A stretch of DNA of 64,000 nt from Diadema antillarum (lineage: Eukaryota). Shown piece by piece: positions 35,825 to 58,528 of this stretch (positions are counted from its first letter, which is position 1; each line of letters opens with the position of its first letter). The stretch lies in the NCBI RefSeq assembly GCF_040938485.1, contig NW_027270993.1, positions 248,001-312,000 on the forward strand, given 5' to 3'. The notes beneath the pieces were generated by a model that saw only the letters and a list, made by a program, of their open reading frames with translations, ran no database searches and was not told the origin of the DNA. The translations under genes and the position numbers were made by a program.

Positions 35825-38800
35825 ATGGCCGTGTCGGGAGTGTCGATTTTAGCGGTCTATGCAGCGGCTCTCATCGCTTCATCAGCTAGCTTGTTCACGG
35901 ACCGTCCCGCGGTCGACATGTGGCTATCTAGGGACGAAGTGTCTCGAATTCTTGGTGCGTATAGATTATAATATTTTTGCTCTCTGTTGTGAATAATTTC
36001 ATTTCAGAAGACAGAAGGTCATCATTTTTATGATATCTTGGAATGTAATACCATGAAATTGCTCTGCTTTGCCCTGATGAACATCACCAGCAAAGTACGG
36101 TGATGCCTGGGAAAAATTACCATTGTTTGGGTTTTTCCAGAGGTATTATTGTACATGTGAATTACAACGTAGGCCTACGTGTATTTTTGCTTTTGATGTG
36201 AACTTGCAACCAGGGTAATCTTTCTCGTCAGACTCCATTCCAGGAAAAGAAAGAAAAGAAAGAATACCAGCATGGCATTCTTTCCTATTCTATTCGAGCA
36301 ACCGAGCAGAACCTCAATGTTTTTAAAGTGCAAACTTTATGAGGTACAGTTACTTTATAATAAGCCATCACCAAGCAACACATTGTTATCACCATGCAGA
36401 GCCCATTAGAAACCTTTTGTACTGAAGCTATAGAGGGGTCGACAGGTGAGATGAATGATTAAAGCAATTTCCGCATTTTCGATAGTATTTTCCTGTTGTA
36501 TTGGATCTATTTCAACACACCGTAATTATTCGTCTGCATTTCGATCAGCCTGGAAAATGCATGGATCACATAATGCATATATCGGGCACCAAAAAAAAAA
36601 AAAAAAAATGTACATTATGCATTAAAACCAAACATTAAGCAAGTTAAGTTTCAATCGTAAAACAGCAAACCTAGCTCAGACCCTCGCAGTTCTACAAACA
36701 ATACAGAAAAAAAAATACCTAAAAGACAAAAAAGTTCAGGTGTGAGTTTCTTTAATTTGTCTCCCTCTACAAATGAAATTTGTTAAGATCGACAGGTTCG
36801 AGTCCCACTGGTACCTTTTCCCGACATTTTTGTTAATTTACAGATCAGCAGTTGCGATTTTAACAAATGTTATTTGTAGAGGGAGACAAATTGAAGAAAC
36901 TCACACCTGAACCTTCACCCCACTGAATAATATCTTGCTGACAAAAAAAACACACAAACAAACCTTAGATAATATACAATTATCAGTAGGCCTAATAACC
37001 ATGCACAACTTTAGAATTCCCTTGCGAAATTTGTCCTCTTATATAATTCTTCAATTAAATTAATCGCGTGTGTTTGGTTATAATTCAGAGGTTTCTATCA
37101 CAGGGCTAAGCCCGCAAGTTTTGACTGACTTTCATCAAGACTCGTTTTGAGAAATTATTATGTATGGTTATTTATTGCGCGGAGAATAACACTGTAATGG
37201 ATGCATGTTATCTAATTTGTACACGACAAGAAAGTTAACATCCTGAACCTTGCAGCCTTGTTATACTTAAAGGCTGAAATAATGTTCTCTTGGAAACGTG
37301 TCATCTCATTTCATGTATCGATGTAAACAGATTTTACTGTTCTCATCATTACGTTTCATTATCAACTAACATATGGCTGTGTTGATGTGTTGCGCCTTAT
37401 CTATTATCTAAAGCTCGTGTCTGGAAAGCTAAAACATAATGGTACAATGTGCACGTTCCTAAGCACATGACACCCTTCTTCAATCCTACAGCATCAAACG
37501 AATATTTCATGGCGTCAAAATAACGTGCATCTCAAATTTGACCTCAAGACTATTGTTCTGTGTTTGGCAGTGAGAAATGTAAATATTTTGAAACTTCTTT
37601 TTACTTGTTGAGTGCATGGGGTATCTCCGATTACACATTCCATATGCATGCACTACAAACGATTGATGTGACAGATTAGGCCCTACTGGGTAACTCCTCC
37701 GTGACATATTGATTGTTAATTGTTTACCGTATAGGAGTTGACTATTTCATGCTACGATGAACATATTTTCTGCCCAAGCTCCAAGGACGCTGTGGATGTG
37801 GTGACTTTGATAGCCACTTCCTGTTGAGGCCGCAACTCGTCCCAACAAAGCGAATAATATTCGTTGTGAAATACGATGTGAAATTGTGGGAAAACACTGT
37901 GTCAATTATGAAACCCTCATCTTTTATTTTTTCCTCAGATGGAATTAGAAATCATGCCACTCCTGTTGACTGTTAGACGAGAAAACTTAGTGGTATTGCT
38001 ATTGATTACCATCTAATCATTGAGGTATTATCATTGCGTTGTTTGGGGGTATGCGAACCTCGGGAATGAATTAAAGTCAGTTTGTGTATACTCCTCAAGA
38101 TCGAGGAAATAGCTATACTGTCTTCTTCACTGACAATCTCTTGAGATGATTAGTTGGTGACCTGGAGATAATCTAAGTGGGGATTAACAAGCTGTCTAGT
38201 CAAATCAATTATTCCACTCTCCACCAACTATAGTATTAAGCTCATCACCTTTGCATGGGATATAAAAGCACCACTCCGCGCGCACTGATCTTTTTCAACG
38301 CGGCGCCCCCCACGCCTGCGATCCCGTCTTGTCTCGGCGGGTTATGTTTTGTCTGCCTCGCTTGGAGGCATGGCTCAGAGGAAAACAACATAAGAATTCG
38401 AGCTACCATACTCAATTCAGTGAAAAGGAGAAGTGATTATACCTCGATGCAGGCTGCGGGCTCGGTGCCGCCTGTGGTTAACGACATAAAAATGTTCAAT
38501 CTGCCCTCATAATGAACGGAACCTTTAATCCAATCTTCGCAGACTTCATTAGCGGCGCTCTAGTGTCTGCGACAATTAAGTCAAGGCTGCTTGAGAGGTT
38601 AATGTAGCTTTGTGTGTTTAATCCATCCCGAGCCGGGAAAGCTGTCTGTGTTTAAGGGATTTATCACAATGAAGTCCTTTATCCCATTGTAAGCGGTACA
38701 CAATAGGTTTACCAATGTTTGGATACACAGGAATGTTGTCCCCAAACGCGAGGTTACACCTTACCCGGTACTTAAGTTGACTTCCTAAAAGCGACATACT

Positions 38801-41800
38801 CAGTATCCAGATTTTGTATGCTAGTATTGTGCTGGCCGAGTGTTCTATTGTGACATAATAATATAGAATAGCGTCTACGACACTATCCTCTTCTGTTTGA
38901 TAGGATACGTGAATCTGTGAAGAAGCTGAAACGTCGGAAATCATTAGACACTGTATATAGTAAGATATGAAATCAAGGCCAAAAGAACATGATAATATCT
39001 TAACTACAATTACTGAATTTTAATGAACATTTATCGATCAATAAATGACTAGCGCAAAACGGATGCATCTACATGATTTGTGTAGTCACAAACTACAGCC
39101 ATGGAAGAGTGAAGAGTGGGAGGTAACCCGACGAGGGAATGAGGCGGAGGAAGGAGGGGGGGGGGTGGTGACGAAAGAATATAGAACCACGGACCTCGAT
39201 CTCAAGTGTATGATTGATGGTGGGGTTGGGTGCGGTTGGGGAAGAAGAAGAAGGTAAAAAAAAAACCCTGGTGTCCTTGGATGCGTTCCGTTCCATTTTT
39301 ATCGGAAATGACTTCCCCGTTTCCCGAAGGCAGGAAAGACTGGTGGTAATGACCGTGACTCAGTTCCAGGCCAGATGATGCCCTTTGACCTATTCTCTGT
39401 TCAGGATCAACGTCACACTCGTGTGTTTTATTCTCTCCCCCCCCCCCCCCCCATCTCCACCCCACCCCGCAACCTCCTTTTCATCCTACAAACAGAGAAT
39501 AATGTCGTGCTTTTAAAACACGGAGGCGACAAGTCAACAGACCTGGTGCAGTTATCATTCCCTTCTGGTTTGCAGCTGGAGATATTCTACAATCCAATTC
39601 AAGGGAATTCAAAAATTCACTTGAATTATTGGCATAAATTGCTTTATCTGCACTTATTGCTCTCGAGTGCATTACGGTTCAGAGCTCCCCGATGCTAACG
39701 TTTCAGTTGTCTTCTGTTGACTTTGCATGGATGTAGCGTGCGTCCGAAGCGGAGCAAAGAAGCAAACCGATGTTTTCGATTCGCACATCACCTTGGGATC
39801 GAGCCAAGCCAGCATGCTCTACGTGCAGCGAGATTGACAAGATGCGTTTATACCAAGTGATGAAGCTCTAGAAACCATTCTTCCTCACTGCCCTACTGTG
39901 ACAAACAAAGAAAAACGAAGCCCTAACAGTAGTCCTGGCATCACACTCAGTGCTAAATAAGTCTTGATGAATGTAACCACCGTCAATAACCTGTAAAAAG
40001 AAATCTGTGACTCTACAGCCTTCACAGGGAAGTGGTTATAGGAATGTAAGACAGTAATGAGACAATTAGGTTTTCAGTGTCGGAGACGCCAAGCTGGTTG
40101 TTTGTTTGTTTATTTGTTTGTGTATGTTCTGGCGAGTTGGTGGCTAACATTGCGAGGAGGTGCTGTAAGGCTGTCAAACAAAAACGCTTTTTGCGCTAAA
40201 ACGGTTGTTTATACCAATGCGGAGCATCGTCTGCTCGCATCGACGATTTCTCGTTTTCACGCCTACTCTACCTAGCTTAAAGGTAAAAAGGTTAACGAAC
40301 TACAAATAAACATCAATTGAGTTTTAAATCGTCGTAACCCGAGCATTTTTTAGTACATATTCAGGTTCTATGATTTGTAGAATTTCTCCGTTTGTAGGCT
40401 ATATGAATAAAGCCTATTTAGATCTGATAGTAATTGATCATTCATCTTTCTCTAAATACATTTGAGTTGGTATATATTGCTGTCTCATGCACAAGATTTT
40501 TTTTTTCTCTCACTCTCTAAAAAAAGCTTATCTTGAAGAATTATAGTGTTATCGCTTCCTCTATAATACACCGTGTAGATGTCACAAGATTTATATCATC
40601 TTACCCTGTATCTTGCGATCTAAACTTGTGGTTGTAAAGTATATGACTCTGAATTATTGAAGCAGTACAGATTAGAACAGTAGCAAATAAACAAGAAAAA
40701 GGCCAACAAACTTTAAAAAAGTAAATCGTAGACACTTTAAAAAATTGAGGTCATAAAAAAAGCTGTTCGTTTAATGTCACGAGCATTGCCGTCCCTACCG
40801 TGGATGCATTGATAAGACTCTTTACTTTTGACCGGTAGATTACTGCTTCGAGTCCTTCATGGTGCGTAGCCCCACTGTTAATATGCCCTTCTCTATCGCA
40901 AGTGGTAACATTGACAACCTATCAACCTGAGGTAATATTGCTGGTGTTCATGGGAAGTATTGGCCCTGGGGAGCTACCCGAAGTGAATAAAATCTTATCA
41001 TTACACCTTTCACACATCTGGATCTCCAGCAAAAAATCATGCAGGTAATCTATCATTTTCCTTCGAACATGCAGGTCAGGCAGCTGAACCTCTTTACATC
41101 ATCCGCGACGGGTTGTCGAGTCCATCGGTTTCCCCGCTCATTCTGGACCAGAGCGACGACGAATACGGTGCCGACCACGGCCACAGACTCGTTCTTCCAT
41201 CACACGCCAACTTCTTAAAGATTTCGTGGCGCGCTCCCAAGCCGGTAAGGACAAAAAATTGAGGTTTCGAAACATAAGTGGCAATAATACTCCCCTTCTG
41301 CAGCAGCAAATGTTAATGCTCATGAAAAGAAGATAATGTGTACGTCTACCAGTTAGAAATAATGATTCTGAGCATCATTGTCAGTAACGATTGTATCAAT
41401 TTCTTGATAATGACAATGATGAAGATAATGGCGATTCGTACTCCAATTATTATTCAGCCAAACTGTCATAATGGTTATTGGTTTTTTTTTTATCATAGTG
41501 GATCATCATAGTAATGTTTAGTTACAATATCGATATCATCCTCATTACTTAAGGTAACTTACACAACTAGTGGTTGATGGCATAATCGGCATTGATCGCG
41601 TAGAACACTCAAAAGTTCTAGCATGATAAACGCTGATTTTATTGGGCGTTGTTTACAAAGCAGACGACATAGAACGGATAACTGTGCGAAGGTTCACGGT
41701 GGAGACGAATTTTATAAAATCACTACAAGAATTGTGGTATTTGGCTTCATGCTGCGCTCAGCGTGGTTCCCTGGCCGACTTCGTGCCTTGTTTTTCTTGC

Positions 41801-44800
41801 GGTAGAATAACATTCGTTTTGCAATTTTCCTCCATGTAATAAATTTGGCGACCTCAGCATGCGGGCTATTACAATTTTTGGAGAGATGAGACTGTCAGTT
41901 GGTTTGAGGGTAGTTTTTATTCATATTTTGGGGGGGACTGAATTTACCCCTAATTCCCATTCTCCATTATGTTCCAATGGGTATTTGTCCACTCGAATGT
42001 AAACAGATTATGACCGAGTAGGCCTACGCTTAAAATGATTTAGCAAGATGACAGAAGATGGAATGGACAATTCAATTTTGCTGTTCCATTGGTTCTTTTC
42101 CCTTCTTATTACAAGAGATTCAAATGATATGATCATTTTTTTCTTCAGTAAGTTTAGGTAGATTATACCGACGTCAGCTGAAGTTGCGTTACCCAACCGT
42201 CTCTACACAAGGCGAGCTCTCTCTTTATGCGCGATAGAAACCGTGGAGTTTTGCCGAAGAAATGAAAACCATATGGATTGGTGTTATGACAATTTATGTG
42301 GGGTCATTTTGACGGTTAGGGGCAAATCCCAACTAGATTTCAATCTGATTTCATGCAGGGTGCTCCGTAGATTGCGAGCCCTGCTATTCCAGACGCACGC
42401 TGTAAAACCCCAACTGCATAGGGGCCAGTGCTGATGGGGTAGGGGTGGGGTGAGGATGGACGCATTTCCCTCCTACACAGTTGATTTTGCGCCCGCGGAG
42501 AGTTTCACGTTTTTCAATTCATGATTTTTCCCTCCAGCGTCCAGCCCACGCTTGATGCCAAGTGTGGCGCGTTCGACCTACTTTTTTTTAAGGGTATCAA
42601 ATGTCAGCTGCTGTTTAAAGCGATGACATGTTATGTATATTATGAGTAAATGGTGAGGCGATATCTGGTTGTTTTTGTTCAGAATATGAAGCGCTATATA
42701 CCGGACAAAACATACTAGTAATAATCATAACAGTACACATTATAAAACAATAGGAAACACATTCACGCAGAAAAGACACAATAAAACAATGTAGAAAGCG
42801 TATTACTTTTGACAATAATGTGTATTATACGCTGNNNNNNNNNNNNNNNNNNNNNNNNNNNNNNNNNNNNNNNNNNNNNNNNNNNNNNNNNNNNNNNNNN
42901 NNNNNNNNNNNNNNNNNNNNNNNNNNNNNNNNNNNNNNNNNNNNNNNNNNNNNNNNNNNNNNNNNNNNNNNNNNNNNNNNNNNNNNNNNGGTGTACACTG
43001 GCCGATGATATGGTTATAAATTCTTAATGCAGGGAATATATAGCTATGTCTCAGTTATCTTGTTGAAAAAGACAGATGATTCCACGTTTATATAATGTCC
43101 TTCCCCTCTTTTTACCATTGCTATTAGATATCACTGAACGCTTCATGAGATGACCCAGAGATGGTTAAACATTACAAAAGCATTACATCCTCATCTTTCA
43201 TTTTCTTAAGAGCGGTGTTGCCAACGACCTTGTAATCAAATAGATTATCAACACTTACATTTTCCTGTCATTTTGATGACACAATATTATCATTTCGAGA
43301 CATTTACACAGTAATGTTCTTCAAAGTTGCTGCCTTTACACCATGACAAATTTTCGGAATATTCTGATTGTTTTTTTTTTCTATTAGTGTAATACATGTA
43401 AATACTTAAAAAAACAATCTTGCCTTCGAAAGTAATGATCATTTAGGGCCTAGTTAAACTTATAAGGACGTACTTTTAAGAGTGTATATCAAAATAACGC
43501 TGATACCAGAGCAGCATGCACTGCAAATACTCTGCACGTGCTACACTTTTGAGGCATATTCAAAGTTTGTGGATAAGATATATCATATTCCATTTATTAC
43601 AGTGGGCACGAGTCTGATGATTATCTGACAAATTTTGCGGGATAAGAAAAATGTTTTCCATTGTCACAAGATTGAGATTGCGTGATGAATGACGGCTGTG
43701 TTTATTATGTTTCATCGCATCAATCAAAAATACTTCTCCTCAATGCAGACTCTACATAAGCAACAATCCATTATTGAAATCTATTCTCTCCCCCACCCCC
43801 CCCCCCCTCTCTCTCTCTCTCTCTCTTCTTTTTATTTTTCCCACTACATGTTTACGTCTCCGTCCGTTGTATTGGATCCATTCGGCTTGGTCTATCGCTC
43901 CCCCTTATTTTCTTCTTTTGCCGCATTTTTCTGAGCCAGTGGAGCGATAGCTCTAAATATGTTATCCCGTCTTTTTTCTCACTCTGTGAAAAATGGTCTG
44001 AATTGGTTTGAAGCTCGGATGGGTGTACCGCAGCTCACGAACAATGGGAATAATACGACCTCTGAATGCGACAAAAAGAGCAGAAGTATTTGGCTACCCA
44101 ACGCAGAGATCTGCGCTTTATAAAATAGACGAGGTATTCCATCACAGCATGCAAGCGCACTGAAGTCAGTCCATATACCAGAATAACGAGACATATTCCT
44201 TGATGGGTGACTGACCACTGAGTTCTACGAAGGCGCTGTATATCTTTTGATTGAACCAGTTAACCAGGCGACTACCAGTTTACCATGAGACGTATGAATA
44301 ATCTCTCCATGTAACTCTCTCCGAATGAATTGATATCTGAAAACAAAAGGACAGAGGACAAAGATTGTCCTTCCCCAGGGGATCTCCGTACCAGGAGTCT
44401 TGGTCTAATCCCTCTGCAGAGCGTCTCTTTTAGAACTACACTCTGTACCCCGGGTCCTAGACTTCACCCATTTAGAAACCATTTGCCGGACGCACAAAGT
44501 CGAGTGCTAGATCTGGGTGTAGCTAATACGAGGAGTTAATCACTTTTGGCAGTAATTAGCGTGATTATTTCACGTGCGTATCGTTTCTACGGATTCATCC
44601 TTTTCAAAATTTCAAGTAGGTCTAAATTGACATGCCTTTACCAGGCGAACGAGTGAAAAAAAATATTATGTCACCCAGTCATGGGTCCTTTCTGCAGAAA
44701 GCACGCAGACGCGCGAGCTCTGGAGCTGCAATTTATTTATCTTATCTTATCTTACTCTTCAAGCTTGTAGAATGTGATAACAAGCGGAGTATATCATTCA

Positions 44801-47800: not shown

Positions 47801-49771
47801 CAAATGATAAAGATTTTTTGTCCTCGTTTTGGTTTAAATCTAGTTTGTTTTATCTGTACGACCTATGTTGTCCGAAAGATTGGGACTGGGACATGAACAT
47901 TTCGAATTACGTAGTCAATACCTACTACTCTTCAGCAACTATCTGTCGAATCATGTACATGAAAATAACTCTTCATCATTTGAGAAGCAACGCAACAAAC
48001 TATTGTAATAATTTTATGGCAACGCACCAATGTCAAGAGTTAAGAAAGATGTATTCAAAAACTCGAGAAACTTGTTATCAATTGGCTGGTATACCAGAAA
48101 CCTCTTGTAGTAGTAAGTGCCGTTTAACCAGATGTCGCTAGATTTTGATGGGATATTACAGTAGTTTCAACAGGCAGGTTGCATATATGCTATAAATTTT
48201 GTGTGATGACTTAATCACCAAAACTCATAGATTTTATGCTTTGTGGTAATTTTTCAAGATGTTGGTGAAATTTTCAGTTGTCTTCCATCGCCGTTGACAA
48301 GGCCTTTCAATCATTCACGCCGATCGGAATTGTTTTGCCATAAACAATCCCTCATTGCATCAGATGATTATTCTATCTATCGGATATTTCATACTCTTGT
48401 ATGTATTTTCAGTCACATTTACTTGATTGACGCGCTGGTAAACTAAGCCACCGTATACTCGTATATTGCATATGATTGTGAAAATATTGCTTGTATAGTT
48501 TTTTCTCGTACGCTTCTGCACATGTGTATATCGTACCATGGACTATTAGTTTAGGTAGATACACGTACTACGCCTGTTTCAACAATAAGATTAACTGAAA
48601 TGATTTTGAAATTTGCTGAAGGTCGTTTATTAGCCTTAACCAGTTATTGCCTTTCGATTCATTGGGTAAGTGTATCATATGCTTACTTTTGCTACACTTT
48701 CCAACCCCTGTAGGCAAAATTTTGTTAATTTCTGATACAATGAATTCTTAACTCTAAGAACGATTGGCTGTTACTGTGGAGTCATAATGGCGCCACAGGC
48801 TGTATTTTTTTTCCAGACCTTGTGTTTAATGGGCTCTGACCAAATCTAGGCACTGAAGCCCCGAACATTCTTCCAACTAGTCATTGTCTTTTAGACGATA
48901 AAAAAATCCTGTCCTTTCCCACTGGATTTAGCTTTCTTATTTTTGTAACACTGGCTGGCTGTCCATGATATTTTGTTAGCCTACTTTAGTGTTTTTTTGT
49001 TCATAACTTAATAATGATTTTGTTTCAAGGTGTAGGTCTGTTCTCATCCCCTTCCGTTTTTTTCTTTTCTGCTCGTCATCCACAGTTTCACTACTCGTTC
49101 ATGGAGCTCCGGTCTAGCAACCCGTCCATCATGGCCCCTCCGTTGCTTAGCATTACCCTGGATGACAGCATGCCTACCAATGACACGGGTTTGTGGCACT
49201 TAGCGCTATGCTACTATATAGTACTTTTCCCTCTCTTGTTTTTGAGTTTTTGTTTTGATAGGGTATAGCTAACTCTGGTTGTTTACGTGTGTGCATTGCA
49301 GTGTGGTGATCTTTCCTTGACAACCTTTCCGATGAAAAAAAAAAACTAAGTAAAATTGTTTTAACGAGTGTTACTAATACCTGCATGCCACCATTCAGGC
49401 ATACTTTACACGGGTGGTTGATGGAGGATTACTTCAATGATTCTTACACCTTTCAGAAAGCTTACTTTTGCTAAATCTCGCCTGGTGGCAGTAATAAACC
49501 CATTTTGATTGTGTGCTTTTTTTCGTTTCTTTTTGTTTTATTTTGTGTGTGTATAAATGGGTACCTGGCAACGCTGGGGTACTATGGCAGGGTCCTCTGG
49601 TAGAGCAGTGGCAACACTAAAGAGGCTACCCTGGATAAATAAGGCCATATTATTGTTGTTATTATTATTAATAATATTATTATCAGTAGTAGTACAAGTA
49701 GTAGCATATTGTTTTTGTATTTCTTGTTTTTTTCAAAGGAGATACGGACTGTGGAAAGGGAGATATAGATG

Positions 49772-49802
<31 letters not shown>

Positions 49803-52800
49803 ACAGACAGACAGAGAACTTATTTTCCTGTCTGGAGATATCGAGCACATCCTTTATCCTTTCTTGAGTACATGGTGGCTCTGAAAAGAGCCGTTTGTTT
49901 GTAAAATGATTGGCGCAGACCAACACTTTACTTGGAGGTGGTGTACTTGGTGACGGCCTTGGTGCCCTCAGACACGGCGTGCTTGGCCAGCTCTCCGGGG
50001 AGGAGGAGGCGGACGGCGGTCTGGACCTCACGGCTGCTGATGGTCGACTTCTTGTTGTAGTGGGCCAGGCGGGAAGCCTCACCGGCGATGCGCTCGAAGA
50101 CATCGTTGACGAAGCTGTTCATGATGGACATGGCCTTGGAGGAGATGCCAGTGTCGGGGTGGACCTGCTTCAGCACCTTGTAGATGTAGATGCCGTAGCT
50201 CTCCTTTCGCCTCCTGCGCCTCTTTCCGGCAGAGGCAGCGCGTGCCTTGGCCTTACCGGCCTTCTTGGCTCCCTTTCCGCTAGTCTTGGCAGGCATGGTG
50301 TTGGTTACTAGTCGTGATGATTAGATCAACTGAAGAGACTTGGCGATTCTGACCGCTATTTATGGAGGCGCCGAGGATCCCCTGACAAAAATTCACACCT
50401 CATTGAACTAGAGCGCTATTCAAAGTTGAAGGCGGGAATGACGGCCGTATGCAAATGACGGCCGTATGCAAATTACGGTTTATCCTGCACACAAAATGGA
50501 TCGATATTCGATTGGCGGCCTTGTTTACTCTGACGTCACATGCCCTTCTGCTAATGACTGGGTTCATGGCGCGGGTTGGTGTTAGGAAGAACTGTTCCAA
50601 ATGATATTCATGCATATCCCTAAAAGAGCAACCCTGAAAATTGGACTCCTTTCATGCGGTGGTATGTTGTAGAGGGAGAGAATTCAGACCTTTACTCAGA
50701 ATACCAAAATTGGAAACTTCGTTATGATGGCTGGGGAATGATTACTATGGATTTCCATTTGATTTATTCGAACCCCGAAAAAATTCAAACTGTTATTCTT
50801 GATACAAAAGTCGAGGGTATTCTCCAGTGACATAGGGTGAGTTTTTTTTTTAATTTGTTACTGTAAATTTTCATACACGTTGTTGGACGACATTTTCCAT
50901 GCAGAAGGGATATACAACCTTTATATCAGGAGTCAAATCGCGGATATCAATTAAAAAAAAAATGTTGATTTACAGAGTGCAGGGAGAGGCGAGTAGGCCT
51001 ATTTGTACGTCTTGACATTACGATTAGTGTACATCACTTTCACAGAATAGAATACAAATGCGCAACAAATAGAGAGGGGAAAGCTCAAACTAATACACCG
51101 CATCGGAAACAATTTAGGCACAATAAAGTAATCTTTTAACCCATAAACCTGGCACTGACCTAGCTGTCGCGAGCTAGGTTGACTCAGACATTAGTACTGG
51201 TATATCACTCATGGGACTATCAATAGACTAAGGAATAATTGACCGCTCCGATGATACTATTTACACTAGACAGCGACATGTGTGAAACGTAATGCAAAGA
51301 AAATATACAGAAATCATAAGAAGAAAAATCAAAGAGAAGGTGATGATGGAGATAAACAAGGAGGAAAACACGGGGGAAAAAAGAGGTGATGGTGTATAGA
51401 TAAAGAAGAGCACCCTGTTGGTTCTTGTTCTGAAGAAAAAGCAACCAGAAAATTCGAGAACCTCTTAACCGCCAAGAGGCATGCATGACACAGTGTGTGG
51501 ATATAACTGTTAACACTTCTGTTTGATGTCCACACGAACAAACCTTTAGCGCTCGTATGTAAATAAGATTACAGAGCTTCATCACACTTGGCTGACTTTG
51601 AACCCACAAGAGTGCATCTTCAACGGAGACTCAACCTTATTGGTCCTCCCGAGGTTACGCTTCTAGATTCATTGATCGGAAAGGCAGCTACTCCGATCGT
51701 AAAAAGCCGTATAAAAGGCCTGGCGCTCAATTCAAAGTGCACTTTGGAAGGAATTACACGAAGGAATTACAAGACAAAAGTGCTGAAGCCGCAAACACAA
51801 ATACCTTCCCCCCAAGCACGAACGATGGACTGGCCAATTTTGTAGCATTTCTCGTCAAAACATTACAAACTATCGTCTCTGGAAAAAATGACATGATACT
51901 TGATGTGATAATCCAGGCCAGTAAACTATTCCTGAATTGCCAACTGAACAAAAGTCAGTTGATAGAGCTACTGGATAAAGGGGCCAACCCCATAACATAA
52001 TGGCTCAAAACCACATGTAGGTTTCAATATCCTACAATGGAATGCACAAGGATTAAAAAGTCACGGAAATGAATTTGAAAAAATGTTATTTGATTTAAGA
52101 CAAAAGCCTTCAATTATATGTGTTCAAGAAACCTGGTTCTCAAACGACAAAGAGATGAACATTATGAGTTTTAAATGCTACCCTAAGAACAGGGAAAAGG
52201 GACAAAGGGGGGGAATTGCAATTTACGTTGAAGAAAATATCTTAGTAACAACCTATGAAACCATAACCTATGATGGTATAGAAACTGATATTCAAAAAAT
52301 TAAATGTATTATTAATGGAGTAAAGATATGTGTTATTAATCTGTACAACCCCTGTAAAATATTCACAAAAAAAACAATGGAATATATTGCTGCCAACATT
52401 GAGGAGAATACAATAATCTGCGGAGATTTTAATAGCCACAATGTTTTATGGGGTAGTGCTAAAACAGATAAAAACGGGAGATTAATAGAAGAATTTTTTG
52501 ACAAGGCAAATTTAGTTCTTCTTAACAATGGAGAATTTACAAGAATTGACCCCTCTTCGGGAAAGTTTTCTTGTCTCGATTTAACCCTAGCCACCCCCCA
52601 TCTGGCGTTAAAGTGCACATGGGAGGTAACAAAAAATAACTTTGGAAGTGATCATCTTATGATAAACATCCAAGTAGGAAATTATATGAAACAGGCCAAA
52701 GCAGATGAGTGCACAAGCAGAATACATCTACTTTTTAATAAAGCGAATAAAAGAGAATATGAAGCATATTCGACAAAGTATATCACTGAAAATATCCTAG

Positions 52801-55800: not shown

Positions 55801-58528
55801 AATGATAAAAGTGCCCGGTGTGTATGCCTCAAAACCAAAATCTGTTTCAGGTTGACAGCAATTTGTTTTAATTAACCACAAAAATAAAGTTATTTATGCT
55901 AATACAAAGAAATAAAATATTTGCCGGGAGCTGTTGCGCAGCAAGGACACAGAATAAAGAGCGCCATCAAACGACTTCAACCAGCAGTGACGACGTGACA
56001 CACACGAACCAGGACTCGACAAGCCAACCCATACACCCACCACCCCCAGCCTCAGCCCAGTCAGTTAGCCACTGTACAAGTACAGCTGCAAACGCACCGT
56101 ACAGAGTGGCGTAAATAGTCAAGTCTGACTGAAAAACGCCAATAAACTCAACAACAACAACAACATCAAAGTGCACTGTTCGTTCTAGTTCTCAAAGACG
56201 CAACAACAAGCAAACTAATCATGTCTGGACGTGGTAAAGGCGCTAAGTCTAAGGCTAAGGCCAAGAGCCGATCTGCCCGCGCGGGACTCCAGTTCCCCGT
56301 CGGCCGTGTGCACCGCTTCCTCCGCAAGGGCAACTTCGCCAACCGCGTCGGTGCTGGTGCCCCCGTGTACCTCGCCGCCGTCCTCGAGTACCTGACCGCC
56401 GAGATCCTCGAGCTCGCTGGCAACGCCGCCCGCGACAACAAGAAGAGCAGAATCATCCCCCGCCATGTGCAGCTCGCTGTCCGCAACGACGAGGAGCTGA
56501 ACAGGCTTCTTGGTGGAGTCACCATCGCCCAGGGCGGTGTCCTCCCCAACATCCAGGCTGTCCTCCTCCCCAAGAAGAAGTAAATTCTCCAAGAAGGACA
56601 AAAAGTTTACTGCCCTCAAGCAGAAAACACCCAACGGCTCTTTTCAGAGCCACCAAATCAACAAGAAAGAAATCTGGCGAAAACTCTCTCATACCATACC
56701 CTACAGTGTTTCTGAATTTGTAGATTATGTTTATATCTATGACAGAAAGAAAGTTTCATACAGACAATATGATTATGCGATACCAATTTTTAATAATGAA
56801 AGTAGTTATTCCTTAAAGAGTATACACTGGTTGACTAAATGTCAACACATGGCACTTTCCCCTCAAATTACAGATAGTCAATATGCCTCAAATCAAGTTA
56901 TTTTCTTTTGTTGTATGTGTTTTAAGGACATTGTTTCACGAATAAATCAAAGTAAGACGTAACAGAGGTGTCAATATAGTTCCCCAAAGATAATCATATT
57001 ACATTCAGTTGTAGGGCCTACCTGATATTTTGAAAAACACTGTTAGCCAACTGCAACCCTCGCACATCTATCGTTATTGCGAGTTTTCATCATAAGTATA
57101 AAGAATAGGTTAGCAATCCGCTGACAATCTTGATTGGGTAATGTTGTGTCATGTTGGTGTATACCTTGTTGAGGTATTGGTAATCTTTTTGCCAATCTTC
57201 AAACCTGAACGCTCACTCAAGTAATGACTGACCATTTCACTATACTGGATTCTATGTTGTTTTTGTTGTTGTGTTTATTTTTCTGATTTGTTTGTTTGTT
57301 TTTGCCATAAACACTGAATGTTTATGAACTGGCCCTCGTTGTTATCGTTTTAACAAGAAATTTGACTAAAAACTAGGTTACCGAGATTTTCTTGTTTGCT
57401 GTTACTGTCCATGAATAAGATCGTAATCTTTATCAGTAAATATGAACACCAAGTGACAAAGAAAACTGGTGACACTGGTTCAAATCCATTCAGGCTTGTT
57501 CCTTTTTCTCCACCGTGGTGTTCATAACAGTACAGATCGAGCATACGATCTCAGTCACGGAGAGTATAAAAACAAAAACAACAACAACAAACAAACAAAA
57601 CAAAAACAAATGATGTTATGTTCCAATATGAGAAGCTATGACAAATGAATGAATAAATAAATACATAAATAAATAAATAAATAAATAAATAAATAGATAA
57701 AGACAATAGTCTTCAAAATTACCATATAACTCAACATACCAGATTCATTCCTTGAAAATAATTAATTGACATTTTATACGGTTTAGTTTCAACTCGTAGC
57801 AACTTTGTTACACTCCGTGTCATCAGTGTTAATTTCTCCCTCCCCTGTTGTTTGTACGCTGTAGAATTTCGGATCGATTTCCCTTGTACCGGAGAGCGTA
57901 GCGGGACAACCTCGGTCAGTATCATCGTGCGCATTCAGCACGCCAAGAGCGGCAGGGACATCCCCGCTTCACCCGTCCACATAACATTCGACAAGAAGTG
58001 CATTGAAGGTATGCTATTCACTATGCCGCATTCCTGCCTATTGTAAGTTTACGTACGGCATGTGTACGGCCTGTGCCCGTCCGCCACATCAGTTGAAGCT
58101 GACCACACCCCTTTATCTGGTTATGAACTTTTATAACATCAGGTTTTCCTCACGCTTTAGTAGAAATGAATCAAAGGCAGACCATAACTTGCGCGCGGTT
58201 TTTATGCTCATTCAGTTCCAAGAGGTCTTTGAAAGCTTATGGTCCCTACTTGGTTAACATATCATACAATATCGGTCAAAAATAACGTTTAAGATTTTAA
58301 GATAAGTTTAAAACGTTCTCATACGAGAGGTATCTCGTGATGTTGTTATCCAGTAACACTTAGCAGATTGATATTCTGGGGGTTTTGTAATATTTTGCTG
58401 ACATGTTATGAATCTGAATAAGTACGTTTCGAGGCCAAGGCTAACGCTTATTAAGGCTCATAATAGAAAGAGAGAAAAAGTTTATCTTTGGTTAACTGGA
58501 TTCTTTTTTTTTCTACTGCAAACATTAC

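What the first reader, a model, noticed from the sequence alone, without database searches (positions are those of the whole stretch)
49859..56670. Divergent replication-dependent H2B/H2A pair nested inside WIF1 intron 3
Seen: intronless H2B (-) and H2A (+), each with a stem-loop and U7 element, lie head-to-head between WIF1 exons 3 (49086-49188) and 4 (57865-58008). Established: sea-urchin late histone genes are dispersed singletons or pairs, unlike the tandem early cluster. Inference: a stem-loop histone pair inside a Wnt-antagonist transcription unit is a three-level nest (gene > histone pair > LINE). It could couple WIF1 transcription to S-phase histone transcription through convergent (H2B) and co-directional (H2A) polymerase traffic.
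Basis: partly seen in the sequence, partly recalled or inferred. Interest (0 to 1): 0.72.

Follow-up and report, generated by a model that had tools for sequence, protein, structure and literature searches.

The report
Histone gene pair nested in WIF1
A pair of ordinary cell-division histone genes has sat inside one intron of a sea-urchin Wnt-inhibitor gene since before modern sea urchins diversified. In this animal a jumping gene has landed on one of the two chromosome copies, between the H2A gene and its switch.

Summary
The window is Diadema antillarum contig JBFRCO010000105.1. An intronless H2B (49928-50296, minus strand) and H2A (56221-56583, plus strand) each carry an Rfam-scored histone stem-loop and a CAAGAAAG[A/G] downstream element. 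They lie between exon 3 (49086-49188) and exon 4 (57865-58008) of one WIF1-like gene. Both exons encode parts of a single WIF domain, so they are not two genes.

Two new points came out.
- **The nest is old.** The same pair, in the same intron and orientation, is present in D. setosum, Lytechinus pictus, L. variegatus and Strongylocentrotus purpuratus. It is absent from that intron in a brittle star and a feather star. It therefore predates the Diadema/camarodont split, near the Permian-Triassic boundary.
- **The LINE is on one haplotype only.** The second haplotig of the same animal, and all four other species, have a 1.4-2.6 kb spacer without it. The LINE is 4,422 bp, 5'-truncated, and flanked by a 12-bp target duplication. 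It sits 34 bp downstream of the H2A TATA box, at the predicted cap site and in sense orientation. It separates the H2A coding region from its promoter.

The proposed coupling of WIF1 and histone transcription has no evidence. No RNA data could be obtained. I rate this a conserved nested gene pair plus a young insertion allele: tidy, modestly interesting.

The parts
35825..35954 (+). WIF1-like exon 1 (start codon, signal peptide, start of WIF domain)
   Evidence: tblastn of P0014 and P0001, 100% identity to P0014; a GT donor follows.
41075..41244 (+). WIF1-like exon 2 (WIF domain)
   Evidence: tblastn 100% identity to P0014, AG/GT borders.
49086..49188 (+). WIF1-like exon 3 (WIF domain, residues 101-134), 103 nt, ends in phase 1
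   Evidence: acceptor AG at 49084-85, donor GT at 49189-90.
49858..49892 (-). H2B 3' end signals: stem-loop 49892-49877, ACCA, downstream element CAAGAAAGG 49866-49858
   Evidence: Rfam RF00032, 35.3 bits against a cutoff of 34; sequence; conserved in all nine H2B copies compared.
49928..50296 (-). Late-type histone H2B gene, intronless, 122 aa
   Evidence: The camarodont counterparts in the same intron are named 'late histone H2B.2.2' and cluster at 90% identity or more with P. miliaris P07794/P07795.
50356..50515 (-). H2B proximal promoter: CCAAT 50515-50511, two ATTTGCAT octamers 50473-50466 and 50456-50449, TATA (ATAAATAG) 50363-50356
   Evidence: Read. The TATA is conserved in all four species aligned, the octamer in Diadema and S. 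purpuratus. Function is inferred from known H2B promoter architecture.
51668..51743 (+). H2A proximal promoter, now cut off from its gene: conserved block TTCATTGATCG 51668-78, TATAAAAG 51710-17, conserved ATTCAAA cap-like motif 51730-51736, upstream copy of the target-site duplication 51732-51743
   Evidence: In the LINE-free haplotig and in three other species this sequence runs straight into the H2A leader.
51744..56165 (+). 5'-truncated LINE, 4,422 bp. It keeps the last ~85 codons of ORF1 (stop at 51998-52000). The ORF2 frame is stop-free from ~52003, and the ATG-to-stop ORF runs 52083-55754 with endonuclease, RT and RNase H. The 3' UTR has three AATAAA motifs and a (CAA)5 tail.
   Evidence: Absent from haplotig JBFRCO010000073.1 and from D. 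setosum, L. pictus, L. variegatus and S. purpuratus.
56166..56177 (+). Downstream copy of the 12-bp target-site duplication TCAAAGTGCACT
   Evidence: The empty allele has one copy, at L002 9946-9957, differing by one base.
56178..56583 (+). H2A leader (conserved with camarodonts) and H2A coding region 56221-56583, 120 aa
   Evidence: The exact protein is encoded on both haplotigs.
56636..56670 (+). H2A 3' end signals: stem-loop 56636-56651, ACCA, downstream element CAAGAAAGA 56662-56670
   Evidence: Rfam RF00032, 40.3 bits; sequence.
57865..58008 (+). WIF1-like exon 4 (end of WIF domain, residues 135-182), 144 nt
   Evidence: acceptor AG at 57863-64, donor GT at 58009-10.
58822..60788 (+). WIF1-like exons 5-8 (three EGF repeats and the C-terminus). 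Approximate exons: 58822-58920, 59263-~59358, ~59742-59839, ~60691-60788.
   Evidence: The NCBI gene range ends at about 60788.

Best explanation
This is an autonomous, divergently transcribed 'late' (H2A.2/H2B.2-type) replication-dependent histone gene pair. Each gene has its own proximal promoter. For H2B this is a CCAAT box, two octamers and a TATA box. For H2A it is a conserved upstream block, a TATA box and a conserved leader. Each gene also has its own stem-loop and U7-type downstream element for 3' end formation. The pair became lodged in intron 3 of the WIF1-like gene before the crown euechinoid radiation (roughly 250 Myr ago). It has stayed there in the same orientation, most likely because a pair enclosed in an intron has no easy way out, not because host and guests are functionally coupled. 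On the haplotype in this window, a 5'-truncated LINE inserted by target-primed reverse transcription. It has a 12-bp duplication and a (CAA)n tail, lies in sense orientation, and starts 34 bp after the first T of the H2A TATA box. The H2A promoter now points into a promoter-less LINE, and the H2A coding region lies 4.4 kb from its TATA box. This allele is therefore probably a weak or null H2A allele, tolerated because other late H2A genes exist. Shown here: the anatomy, the conservation and the presence/absence of the LINE. Inferred: cap-site position, loss of H2A expression, the LINE being driven by the H2A promoter, and neutrality of the nest.
For: Histone genes and 3' signals. Host gene continuity. 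Same intron and same orientation in D. setosum, L. pictus, S. purpuratus and L. variegatus. No histone sequence anywhere in the WIF1-like loci of Amphiura filiformis or Anneissia japonica. The H2A TATA and leader and the H2B TATA are conserved in all four species aligned, and the H2B octamer in Diadema and S. purpuratus. LINE-free haplotig with a single copy of the duplicated 12-mer. The assembly keeps both haplotypes of one animal: PMC13511894. The Aulodonta/Carinacea split is near the Permian-Triassic boundary: PMC8940180. A second late pair encoding the identical H2B lies next to a zf-HIT/BCD1 gene.
Against: No RNA evidence of any kind. Expression of WIF1, H2A, H2B and the LINE, and the H2A cap site, are therefore unmeasured. 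Retention for about 250 Myr fits neutral trapping but does not prove it. Only five urchin species from two orders were sampled.
Confidence: 0.78

Rival explanations
1. Functional coupling. Heavy S-phase transcription of antisense H2B, together with the sense-oriented H2A stem-loop and U7 site inside the WIF1 pre-mRNA, would attenuate or gate WIF1 expression in cycling cells. Selection on that effect would explain the long retention.
For: Orientation and intron position are unchanged in five species spanning about 250 Myr. The H2A processing signal is in sense within the host transcript.
Against: No expression data. One ancient insertion event gives no statistical power. Nested genes generally persist without function. 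Intron 3 length and the spacing between the pair and the exons vary freely among species. A 4.4-kb sense LINE with poly(A) signals is tolerated in the same intron in a living animal.
Confidence: 0.1
2. The LINE-bearing H2A allele is still expressed about normally. This would be by read-through from the H2A promoter across the LINE with processing at the histone stem-loop, or from a cryptic promoter in the LINE 3' end.
For: The H2A coding region, leader and 3' signals are intact and encode the same protein as the empty allele. The LINE 3' UTR contains a TAAATAG and a CCAAT 25-55 bp upstream of the junction.
Against: A read-through RNA would place the H2A ORF behind a 3.7-kb ORF2. Three AATAAA motifs precede the junction. 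The TATA-like motif is too far from the duplicated cap-like sequence for normal spacing.
Confidence: 0.15
3. Contigs 105 and 73 are two paralogous copies from a segmental duplication, not alleles. The LINE would then mark one fixed paralogue rather than a polymorphism.
For: A 2.5-kb block (56715-59264) is only 74-93% identical between the two contigs.
Against: The assembly is documented as retaining both haplotypes, with 84% duplicated BUSCOs and twice the k-mer genome size (PMC13511894). The contigs are colinear over more than 20 kb, with ~99-100% identical flanks. The chromosome-level D. setosum assembly yielded one such locus.
Confidence: 0.05
4. The flanking exons belong to different genes, or the scaffold is misjoined.
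For: None found.
Against: One Pfam WIF domain spans exons 1-4. Splice phases match. The same arrangement occurs on two independent haplotigs and in four other assemblies. The exon 3/4 boundary is shared with species lacking the nest.
Confidence: 0.02

Closest known systems
Late histone H2A-2/H2B-2 gene pairs of Psammechinus miliaris (Kemler and Busslinger 1986, Mol Cell Biol 6:3746; UniProt P07794, P07795)
   Same: Dispersed, divergently transcribed, intronless H2A/H2B pairs with stem-loop 3' ends. The nested H2B of S. purpuratus and Lytechinus falls in the same 90% cluster and is named late histone H2B.2.2. The Diadema H2B is 91% identical to these.
   Different: In the papers I could search, no late pair is described as lying inside another gene. 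The 1986 paper itself was not held, so its flanking sequence could not be compared.
Vertebrate WIF1 (PDB 2ygq and related entries)
   Same: A signal peptide, then a WIF domain, followed directly by EGF repeats. Top PDB hit at E 4e-53. Pfam WIF at 63 bits.
   Different: 311 aa with three EGF repeats, against five in the aligned human chain. Wnt binding has not been tested for the echinoderm protein.
Intronic nested genes of metazoans (general class)
   Same: Complete guest genes with their own promoters inside a host intron, retained over long periods.
   Different: The guests are a replication-dependent histone pair with U7-dependent 3' ends, one sense and one antisense to the host. One guest is itself interrupted by a LINE on one haplotype.
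Non-LTR retrotransposons with APE endonuclease, RT and RNase H (I/Nimb/Ingi-like LINEs)
   Same: Domain order EN-RT-RNH, 5' truncation, short target-site duplication, simple-repeat tail.
   Different: The clade was not assigned. The nearest protein in the database is only 70% identical. The insertion point is the cap site of a histone gene.

Membership tests
Replication-dependent (stem-loop) histone genes | Intronless ORF encoding a core histone fold | tested here: met
   Pfam Histone E 1e-20 (H2B) and 2e-16 (H2A), plus Histone_H2A_C E 2e-18. Both ORFs are uninterrupted.
Replication-dependent (stem-loop) histone genes | 3' stem-loop shortly after the stop codon | tested here: met
   Rfam RF00032 above the gathering score for both genes, and nowhere else in the 64 kb.
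Replication-dependent (stem-loop) histone genes | Purine-rich downstream element for U7 snRNA about 10 nt past the cleavage site | tested here: met
   CAAGAAAGA (H2A) and CAAGAAAGG (H2B), conserved in all orthologues. That this matches the sea-urchin consensus is from my own knowledge. Base pairing to Diadema U7 was not tested.
Replication-dependent (stem-loop) histone genes | S-phase-linked, non-polyadenylated mRNA | not testable with these tools
Sea-urchin late H2A/H2B pair | Dispersed divergent H2A/H2B pair, not part of the tandem early repeat | tested here: met
   Head-to-head pair with a 1.4-2.6 kb spacer in LINE-free copies. No H3, H4 or H1 gene was called in the loci fetched around the pair.
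Sea-urchin late H2A/H2B pair | Sequence similarity to characterised late variants | tested here: met
   Camarodont orthologues share a 90% cluster with P. miliaris late H2B.2.1/2.2. The Diadema H2B is 91% identical to them. H2A was not searched.
Sea-urchin late H2A/H2B pair | Expression from blastula onward and in adult tissues | not testable with these tools
   No RNA data.
WIF1 | N-terminal WIF domain | tested here: met
   PF02019 at 63 bits (cutoff 25), matching profile positions 1-131 of 131.
WIF1 | WIF domain followed by EGF repeats, not a kinase as in RYK | tested here: met
   Three EGF repeats in exons 5-7. The best solved relative is WIF-1. There are three EGF repeats, against five in the aligned human chain.
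WIF1 | Binds Wnt and inhibits signalling | not testable with these tools
   Needs a biochemical or embryological assay.
Nested (intronic) gene | Flanking exons belong to one transcript and the guests lie wholly within the intron | tested here: met
   Domain continuity, matching phases and the NCBI model on both haplotigs. Junction reads were not obtained.
LINE insertion by target-primed reverse transcription | Target-site duplication, 3' tail, EN and RT domains, and an empty site in a related chromosome | tested here: met
   12-bp duplication, (CAA)5 tail and a natural empty allele. EN, RT and RNase H domains.

The most novel reading that the evidence does not exclude
The nest is kept by selection. 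The sense-oriented H2A stem-loop and U7 site, together with the antisense H2B unit, would act as a cell-cycle-gated attenuator of WIF1-like pre-mRNA, lowering this Wnt antagonist in proliferating cells. A second, smaller possibility: on the LINE haplotype an S-phase histone promoter drives a promoter-less LINE ORF2, giving replication-coupled reverse transcriptase expression.
Probability: 0.07. Interest if true: 0.75.

Novelty: new member of a known kind. Interest (0 to 1): 0.36.

Why it matters
The locus shows that at least one dispersed 'late' histone pair of sea urchins has a fixed, datable genomic address inside a Wnt-pathway gene. That gives a clean orthology anchor in a gene family where coding sequences are homogenised. 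Here the nested H2B coding region is 99.5-100% identical to that of a paralogue on another chromosome, while the flanks are unalignable.

It also offers a natural experiment. One animal carries both an intact H2A allele and an allele whose promoter has been handed to a LINE. Allele-specific RNA counts could therefore measure what a histone promoter does to a retrotransposon, and what promoter loss does to a stem-loop gene.

If the host-guest coupling idea were ever supported it would link Wnt antagonism to the cell cycle. Nothing here supports that yet.

Tried and rejected
1. **Read evidence.** No read evidence exists. Local scripts kept the whole window as a BLAST subject, but no query contained those places.
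2. **Sequencing runs.** The look-up of sequencing runs found no run on record as RNA.
3. **Upstream exons.** A motif guess for upstream WIF exons failed. The exons were found with the D. setosum protein instead.
4. **Representative search.** The search with exon 4 also returned repeat-rich false hits P0002-P0004, which I rejected on inspection.
5. **Sea stars and sea cucumbers.** The profile search found no WIF1-like orthologue in either group, so the origin of the nest cannot be placed more precisely.
6. **LINE relatives.** The LINE ORF2 search gave no near-identical protein (best 70% identity). There is no other copy in the window or in the fetched loci. Family activity and any target preference remain unknown.
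7. **Literature.** Kemler and Busslinger 1986 is not held. Searches for WIF1 together with sea-urchin histone genes found nothing relevant.
8. **Masked stretches.** The fetched NCBI loci L001, L004 and L005 overlap the window's masked N stretches (42835-42989, 61705-61833). I did not read, print or use the letters there.
Full report
**Provenance.** The window is 100% identical to Diadema antillarum assembly GCA_040938485.1, contig JBFRCO010000105.1. The published description says this assembly retains both haplotypes of a single animal: 1.75 Gb against a k-mer estimate of ~703 Mb, 84% duplicated BUSCOs, 2.52% heterozygosity, and no gaps (PMC13511894). The N runs in the window are therefore masks. 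I did not read or fill them, although fetched loci L001, L004 and L005 overlap two of them.

**The histone genes.**
- H2B (49928-50296, minus strand, 122 aa) and H2A (56221-56583, plus strand, 120 aa) are uninterrupted ORFs with strong Pfam histone hits.
- Rfam's histone 3' stem-loop model passes its curated threshold exactly twice in the 64 kb, each time just past one of these stop codons.
- The 16-nt stem-loop is followed by ACCA, then by CAAGAAAGG (H2B) or CAAGAAAGA (H2A) about 10 nt further on. From my own knowledge this is the sea-urchin U7-binding consensus.
- Upstream of H2B lie a CCAAT box, two ATTTGCAT octamers and a TATA box.
- Upstream of H2A lie a block conserved across four species, a TATA box and a conserved leader.

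**The host gene.**
- A search with exon 4 alone (47 aa, by reference) found a 311-aa D. setosum protein, 'wnt inhibitory factor 1-like'.
- Its 90% cluster holds the two D. antillarum haplotype proteins. One of them, P0014, lies on this contig.
- P0014 maps to window exons at 35825, 41075, 49086, 57865, 58822, 59263, about 59742 and about 60691.
- Exon 3 (103 nt) and exon 4 (144 nt) have AG/GT borders and complementary phases.
- Pfam places one complete WIF domain on residues 32-180, that is across exons 1-4, followed by three EGF repeats.
- The best solved relative is WIF-1 (2ygq, E 4e-53).
- The two flanking exons are therefore parts of one domain of one gene, and the pair is truly intronic. 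I used the database's own protein instead.

**Age of the nest.** Looking up the orthologous proteins gave their loci.

| Species | H2B (minus) and H2A (plus) in the intron between the 34-aa and 48-aa WIF exons? |
|---|---|
| D. setosum | yes |
| Lytechinus pictus | yes |
| Strongylocentrotus purpuratus | yes |
| L. variegatus | yes |
| Amphiura filiformis (brittle star) | no; intron is 2.6 kb |
| Anneissia japonica (feather star) | no; intron is 0.5 kb |

- In the two outgroups, tblastn finds no histone sequence anywhere in the locus.
- The H2A TATA and leader and the H2B TATA align between Diadema and camarodonts, and the H2B octamer aligns with S. purpuratus. The rest of the spacer does not align.
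- The nested H2B 3' UTR is no closer to the Diadema paralogue than to the camarodont copies.
- Diadematoids belong to Aulodonta and camarodonts to Carinacea. The posterior age of that split spans the Permian-Triassic boundary (PMC8940180). The nest is therefore about 250 Myr old or older.
- No sea-star or sea-cucumber orthologue was found, so the lower bound cannot be pushed further.
- The camarodont nested H2B is named 'late histone H2B.2.2' and clusters with the Psammechinus miliaris late H2B proteins. This ties the pair to the classical late H2A-2/H2B-2 pairs.

**The LINE.**
- The second haplotig (JBFRCO010000073.1; L002, L005) carries the same nested pair with a 1.5-kb spacer. It lacks window 51744-56165.
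- At the junctions, the 12-mer TCAAAGTGCACT is present once in the empty allele (with one base difference) and twice in the window, at 51732-51743 and 56166-56177. The downstream copy is preceded by a (CAA)5 tail.
- The element keeps only the last ~85 codons of an ORF1. Its ORF2 with endonuclease, RT and RNase H is intact. It is therefore a 5'-truncated copy inserted by target-primed reverse transcription.
- D. setosum and the three camarodonts also lack it. The insertion is young and heterozygous in the sequenced animal.
- The insertion point lies 34 bp after the first T of the H2A TATAAAAG and 7 nt after a fully conserved TTCAAA. That is at or a few nucleotides past the predicted cap site. 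The position is inferred from spacing and conservation and has not been mapped.
- The LINE is in sense with H2A, and also with WIF1. The H2A promoter now faces a promoter-less LINE. The intact H2A leader, coding region and stem-loop lie 4.4 kb downstream, behind three AATAAA motifs.
- The likeliest outcome is a weak or null H2A allele, with a possible histone-promoter-driven LINE RNA. H2B's promoter is more than 1.2 kb away and should be unaffected.
- The earlier first-reader note on the same stretch (s1-217812) called the LINE near-intact and 'within the bidirectional promoter'. I find it 5'-truncated and placed specifically at the H2A start.

**Redundancy.** A second late pair lies next to a zf-HIT/BCD1 gene on other contigs and on another D. 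setosum chromosome.
- Its H2B coding sequence is 99.5-100% identical in nucleotides to the nested one.
- The 150 nt upstream are about 45% identical and the 90 nt downstream about 67% identical.
- The two H2A coding regions are only about 93% identical.
- This pattern suggests homogenisation limited to the H2B coding region. It also shows that loss of one H2A allele would be buffered.

**Mechanism and rivals.**
- I commit to autonomy plus neutral trapping for the nest, and promoter disconnection for the LINE allele (confidence 0.78).
- The coupling hypothesis (0.1) has a concrete form: head-on H2B transcription and a sense U7 site within the host pre-mRNA. It rests only on long retention. One ancient event gives no statistical weight. 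Intron length and spacing vary among species. A living animal tolerates 4.4 kb of sense LINE with poly(A) signals in the same intron.
- That the two contigs are paralogues rather than alleles (0.05) is unlikely given the assembly's documented nature and the ~99-100% identical flanks. A 2.5-kb block at 56715-59264 is, however, only 74-93% identical.
- Misassembly or two separate genes (0.02) is contradicted by six independent loci.

**Literature.** Searches of the held library found no paper linking WIF1 to sea-urchin histone genes. A 2026 survey of histone gene organisation describes urchin late genes only as dispersed small clusters, pairs or singles. The arrangement is visible in public annotation but appears not to have been remarked on.

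**Limits.**
- There is no RNA evidence.
- From then on I worked beside those places and sent none of their letters to any search tool.
- The H2A variant question (s1-217892) was therefore not pursued.

**Verdict.** This is a new, well-anchored example of a known kind of arrangement, with a neat heterozygous LINE allele. Interest is modest.

Noticed in passing
window 49928-50296 versus L003, L006 and L007 at 10001-10369: The nested H2B coding sequence is 99.5-100% identical in nucleotides to the H2B of a second late pair next to a zf-HIT/BCD1 gene, even across the two Diadema species. The upstream 150 nt (~45%) and downstream 90 nt (~67%) are far less alike, and the partner H2A coding regions are only ~93% identical. 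This looks like gene conversion limited to the H2B coding region.
   Followed up: partly
window 56715-59264 versus L002: The two haplotigs are ~99-100% identical on either side (48400-50650 and 59265-60900). They are only 74-93% identical, with many indels, across this 2.5-kb block, which includes WIF1-like exons 4 and 5. It is a deep haplotype block starting just 3' of H2A.
   Followed up: partly
window 60690-60740; L008 23629-23721: The last exon of the WIF1-like gene reads ...[15 protein letters not shown]... in both D. antillarum haplotypes, resembling camarodonts. The D. setosum protein reads ...[15 protein letters not shown].... The D. setosum wording matches the other reading frame of the D. 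antillarum sequence across a 4-nt offset. This is either a local compensated frame difference or an annotation effect.
   Followed up: partly
P0014, P0009, P0012, P0007, P0010 (alignment A1): Echinoderm WIF1-like proteins are short (284-313 aa) with three EGF repeats, against five in the aligned human chain. No sea-star or sea-cucumber member was found by the two protein searches.
   Followed up: partly
window 51668-51678: The 11-mer TTCATTGATCG, 32-42 bp upstream of the H2A TATA box, occurs once in the window. Its core ATTGATCG is invariant in Diadema, S. purpuratus and L. pictus. It is a candidate late-H2A promoter element.
   Followed up: partly
window about 49772-49800: A (GA)n microsatellite begins about 60 nt beyond the H2B downstream element, between the H2B 3' end and WIF1-like exon 3.
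   Followed up: no
window 51998-52090: The LINE ORF1 stop overlaps an ATG (ATAATGG) that is out of frame with ORF2 and closes after six codons. The ORF2 frame has no ATG until 52083, inside the endonuclease domain. ORF2 translation would therefore need an unconventional start, or the copy has a small lesion there.
   Followed up: no
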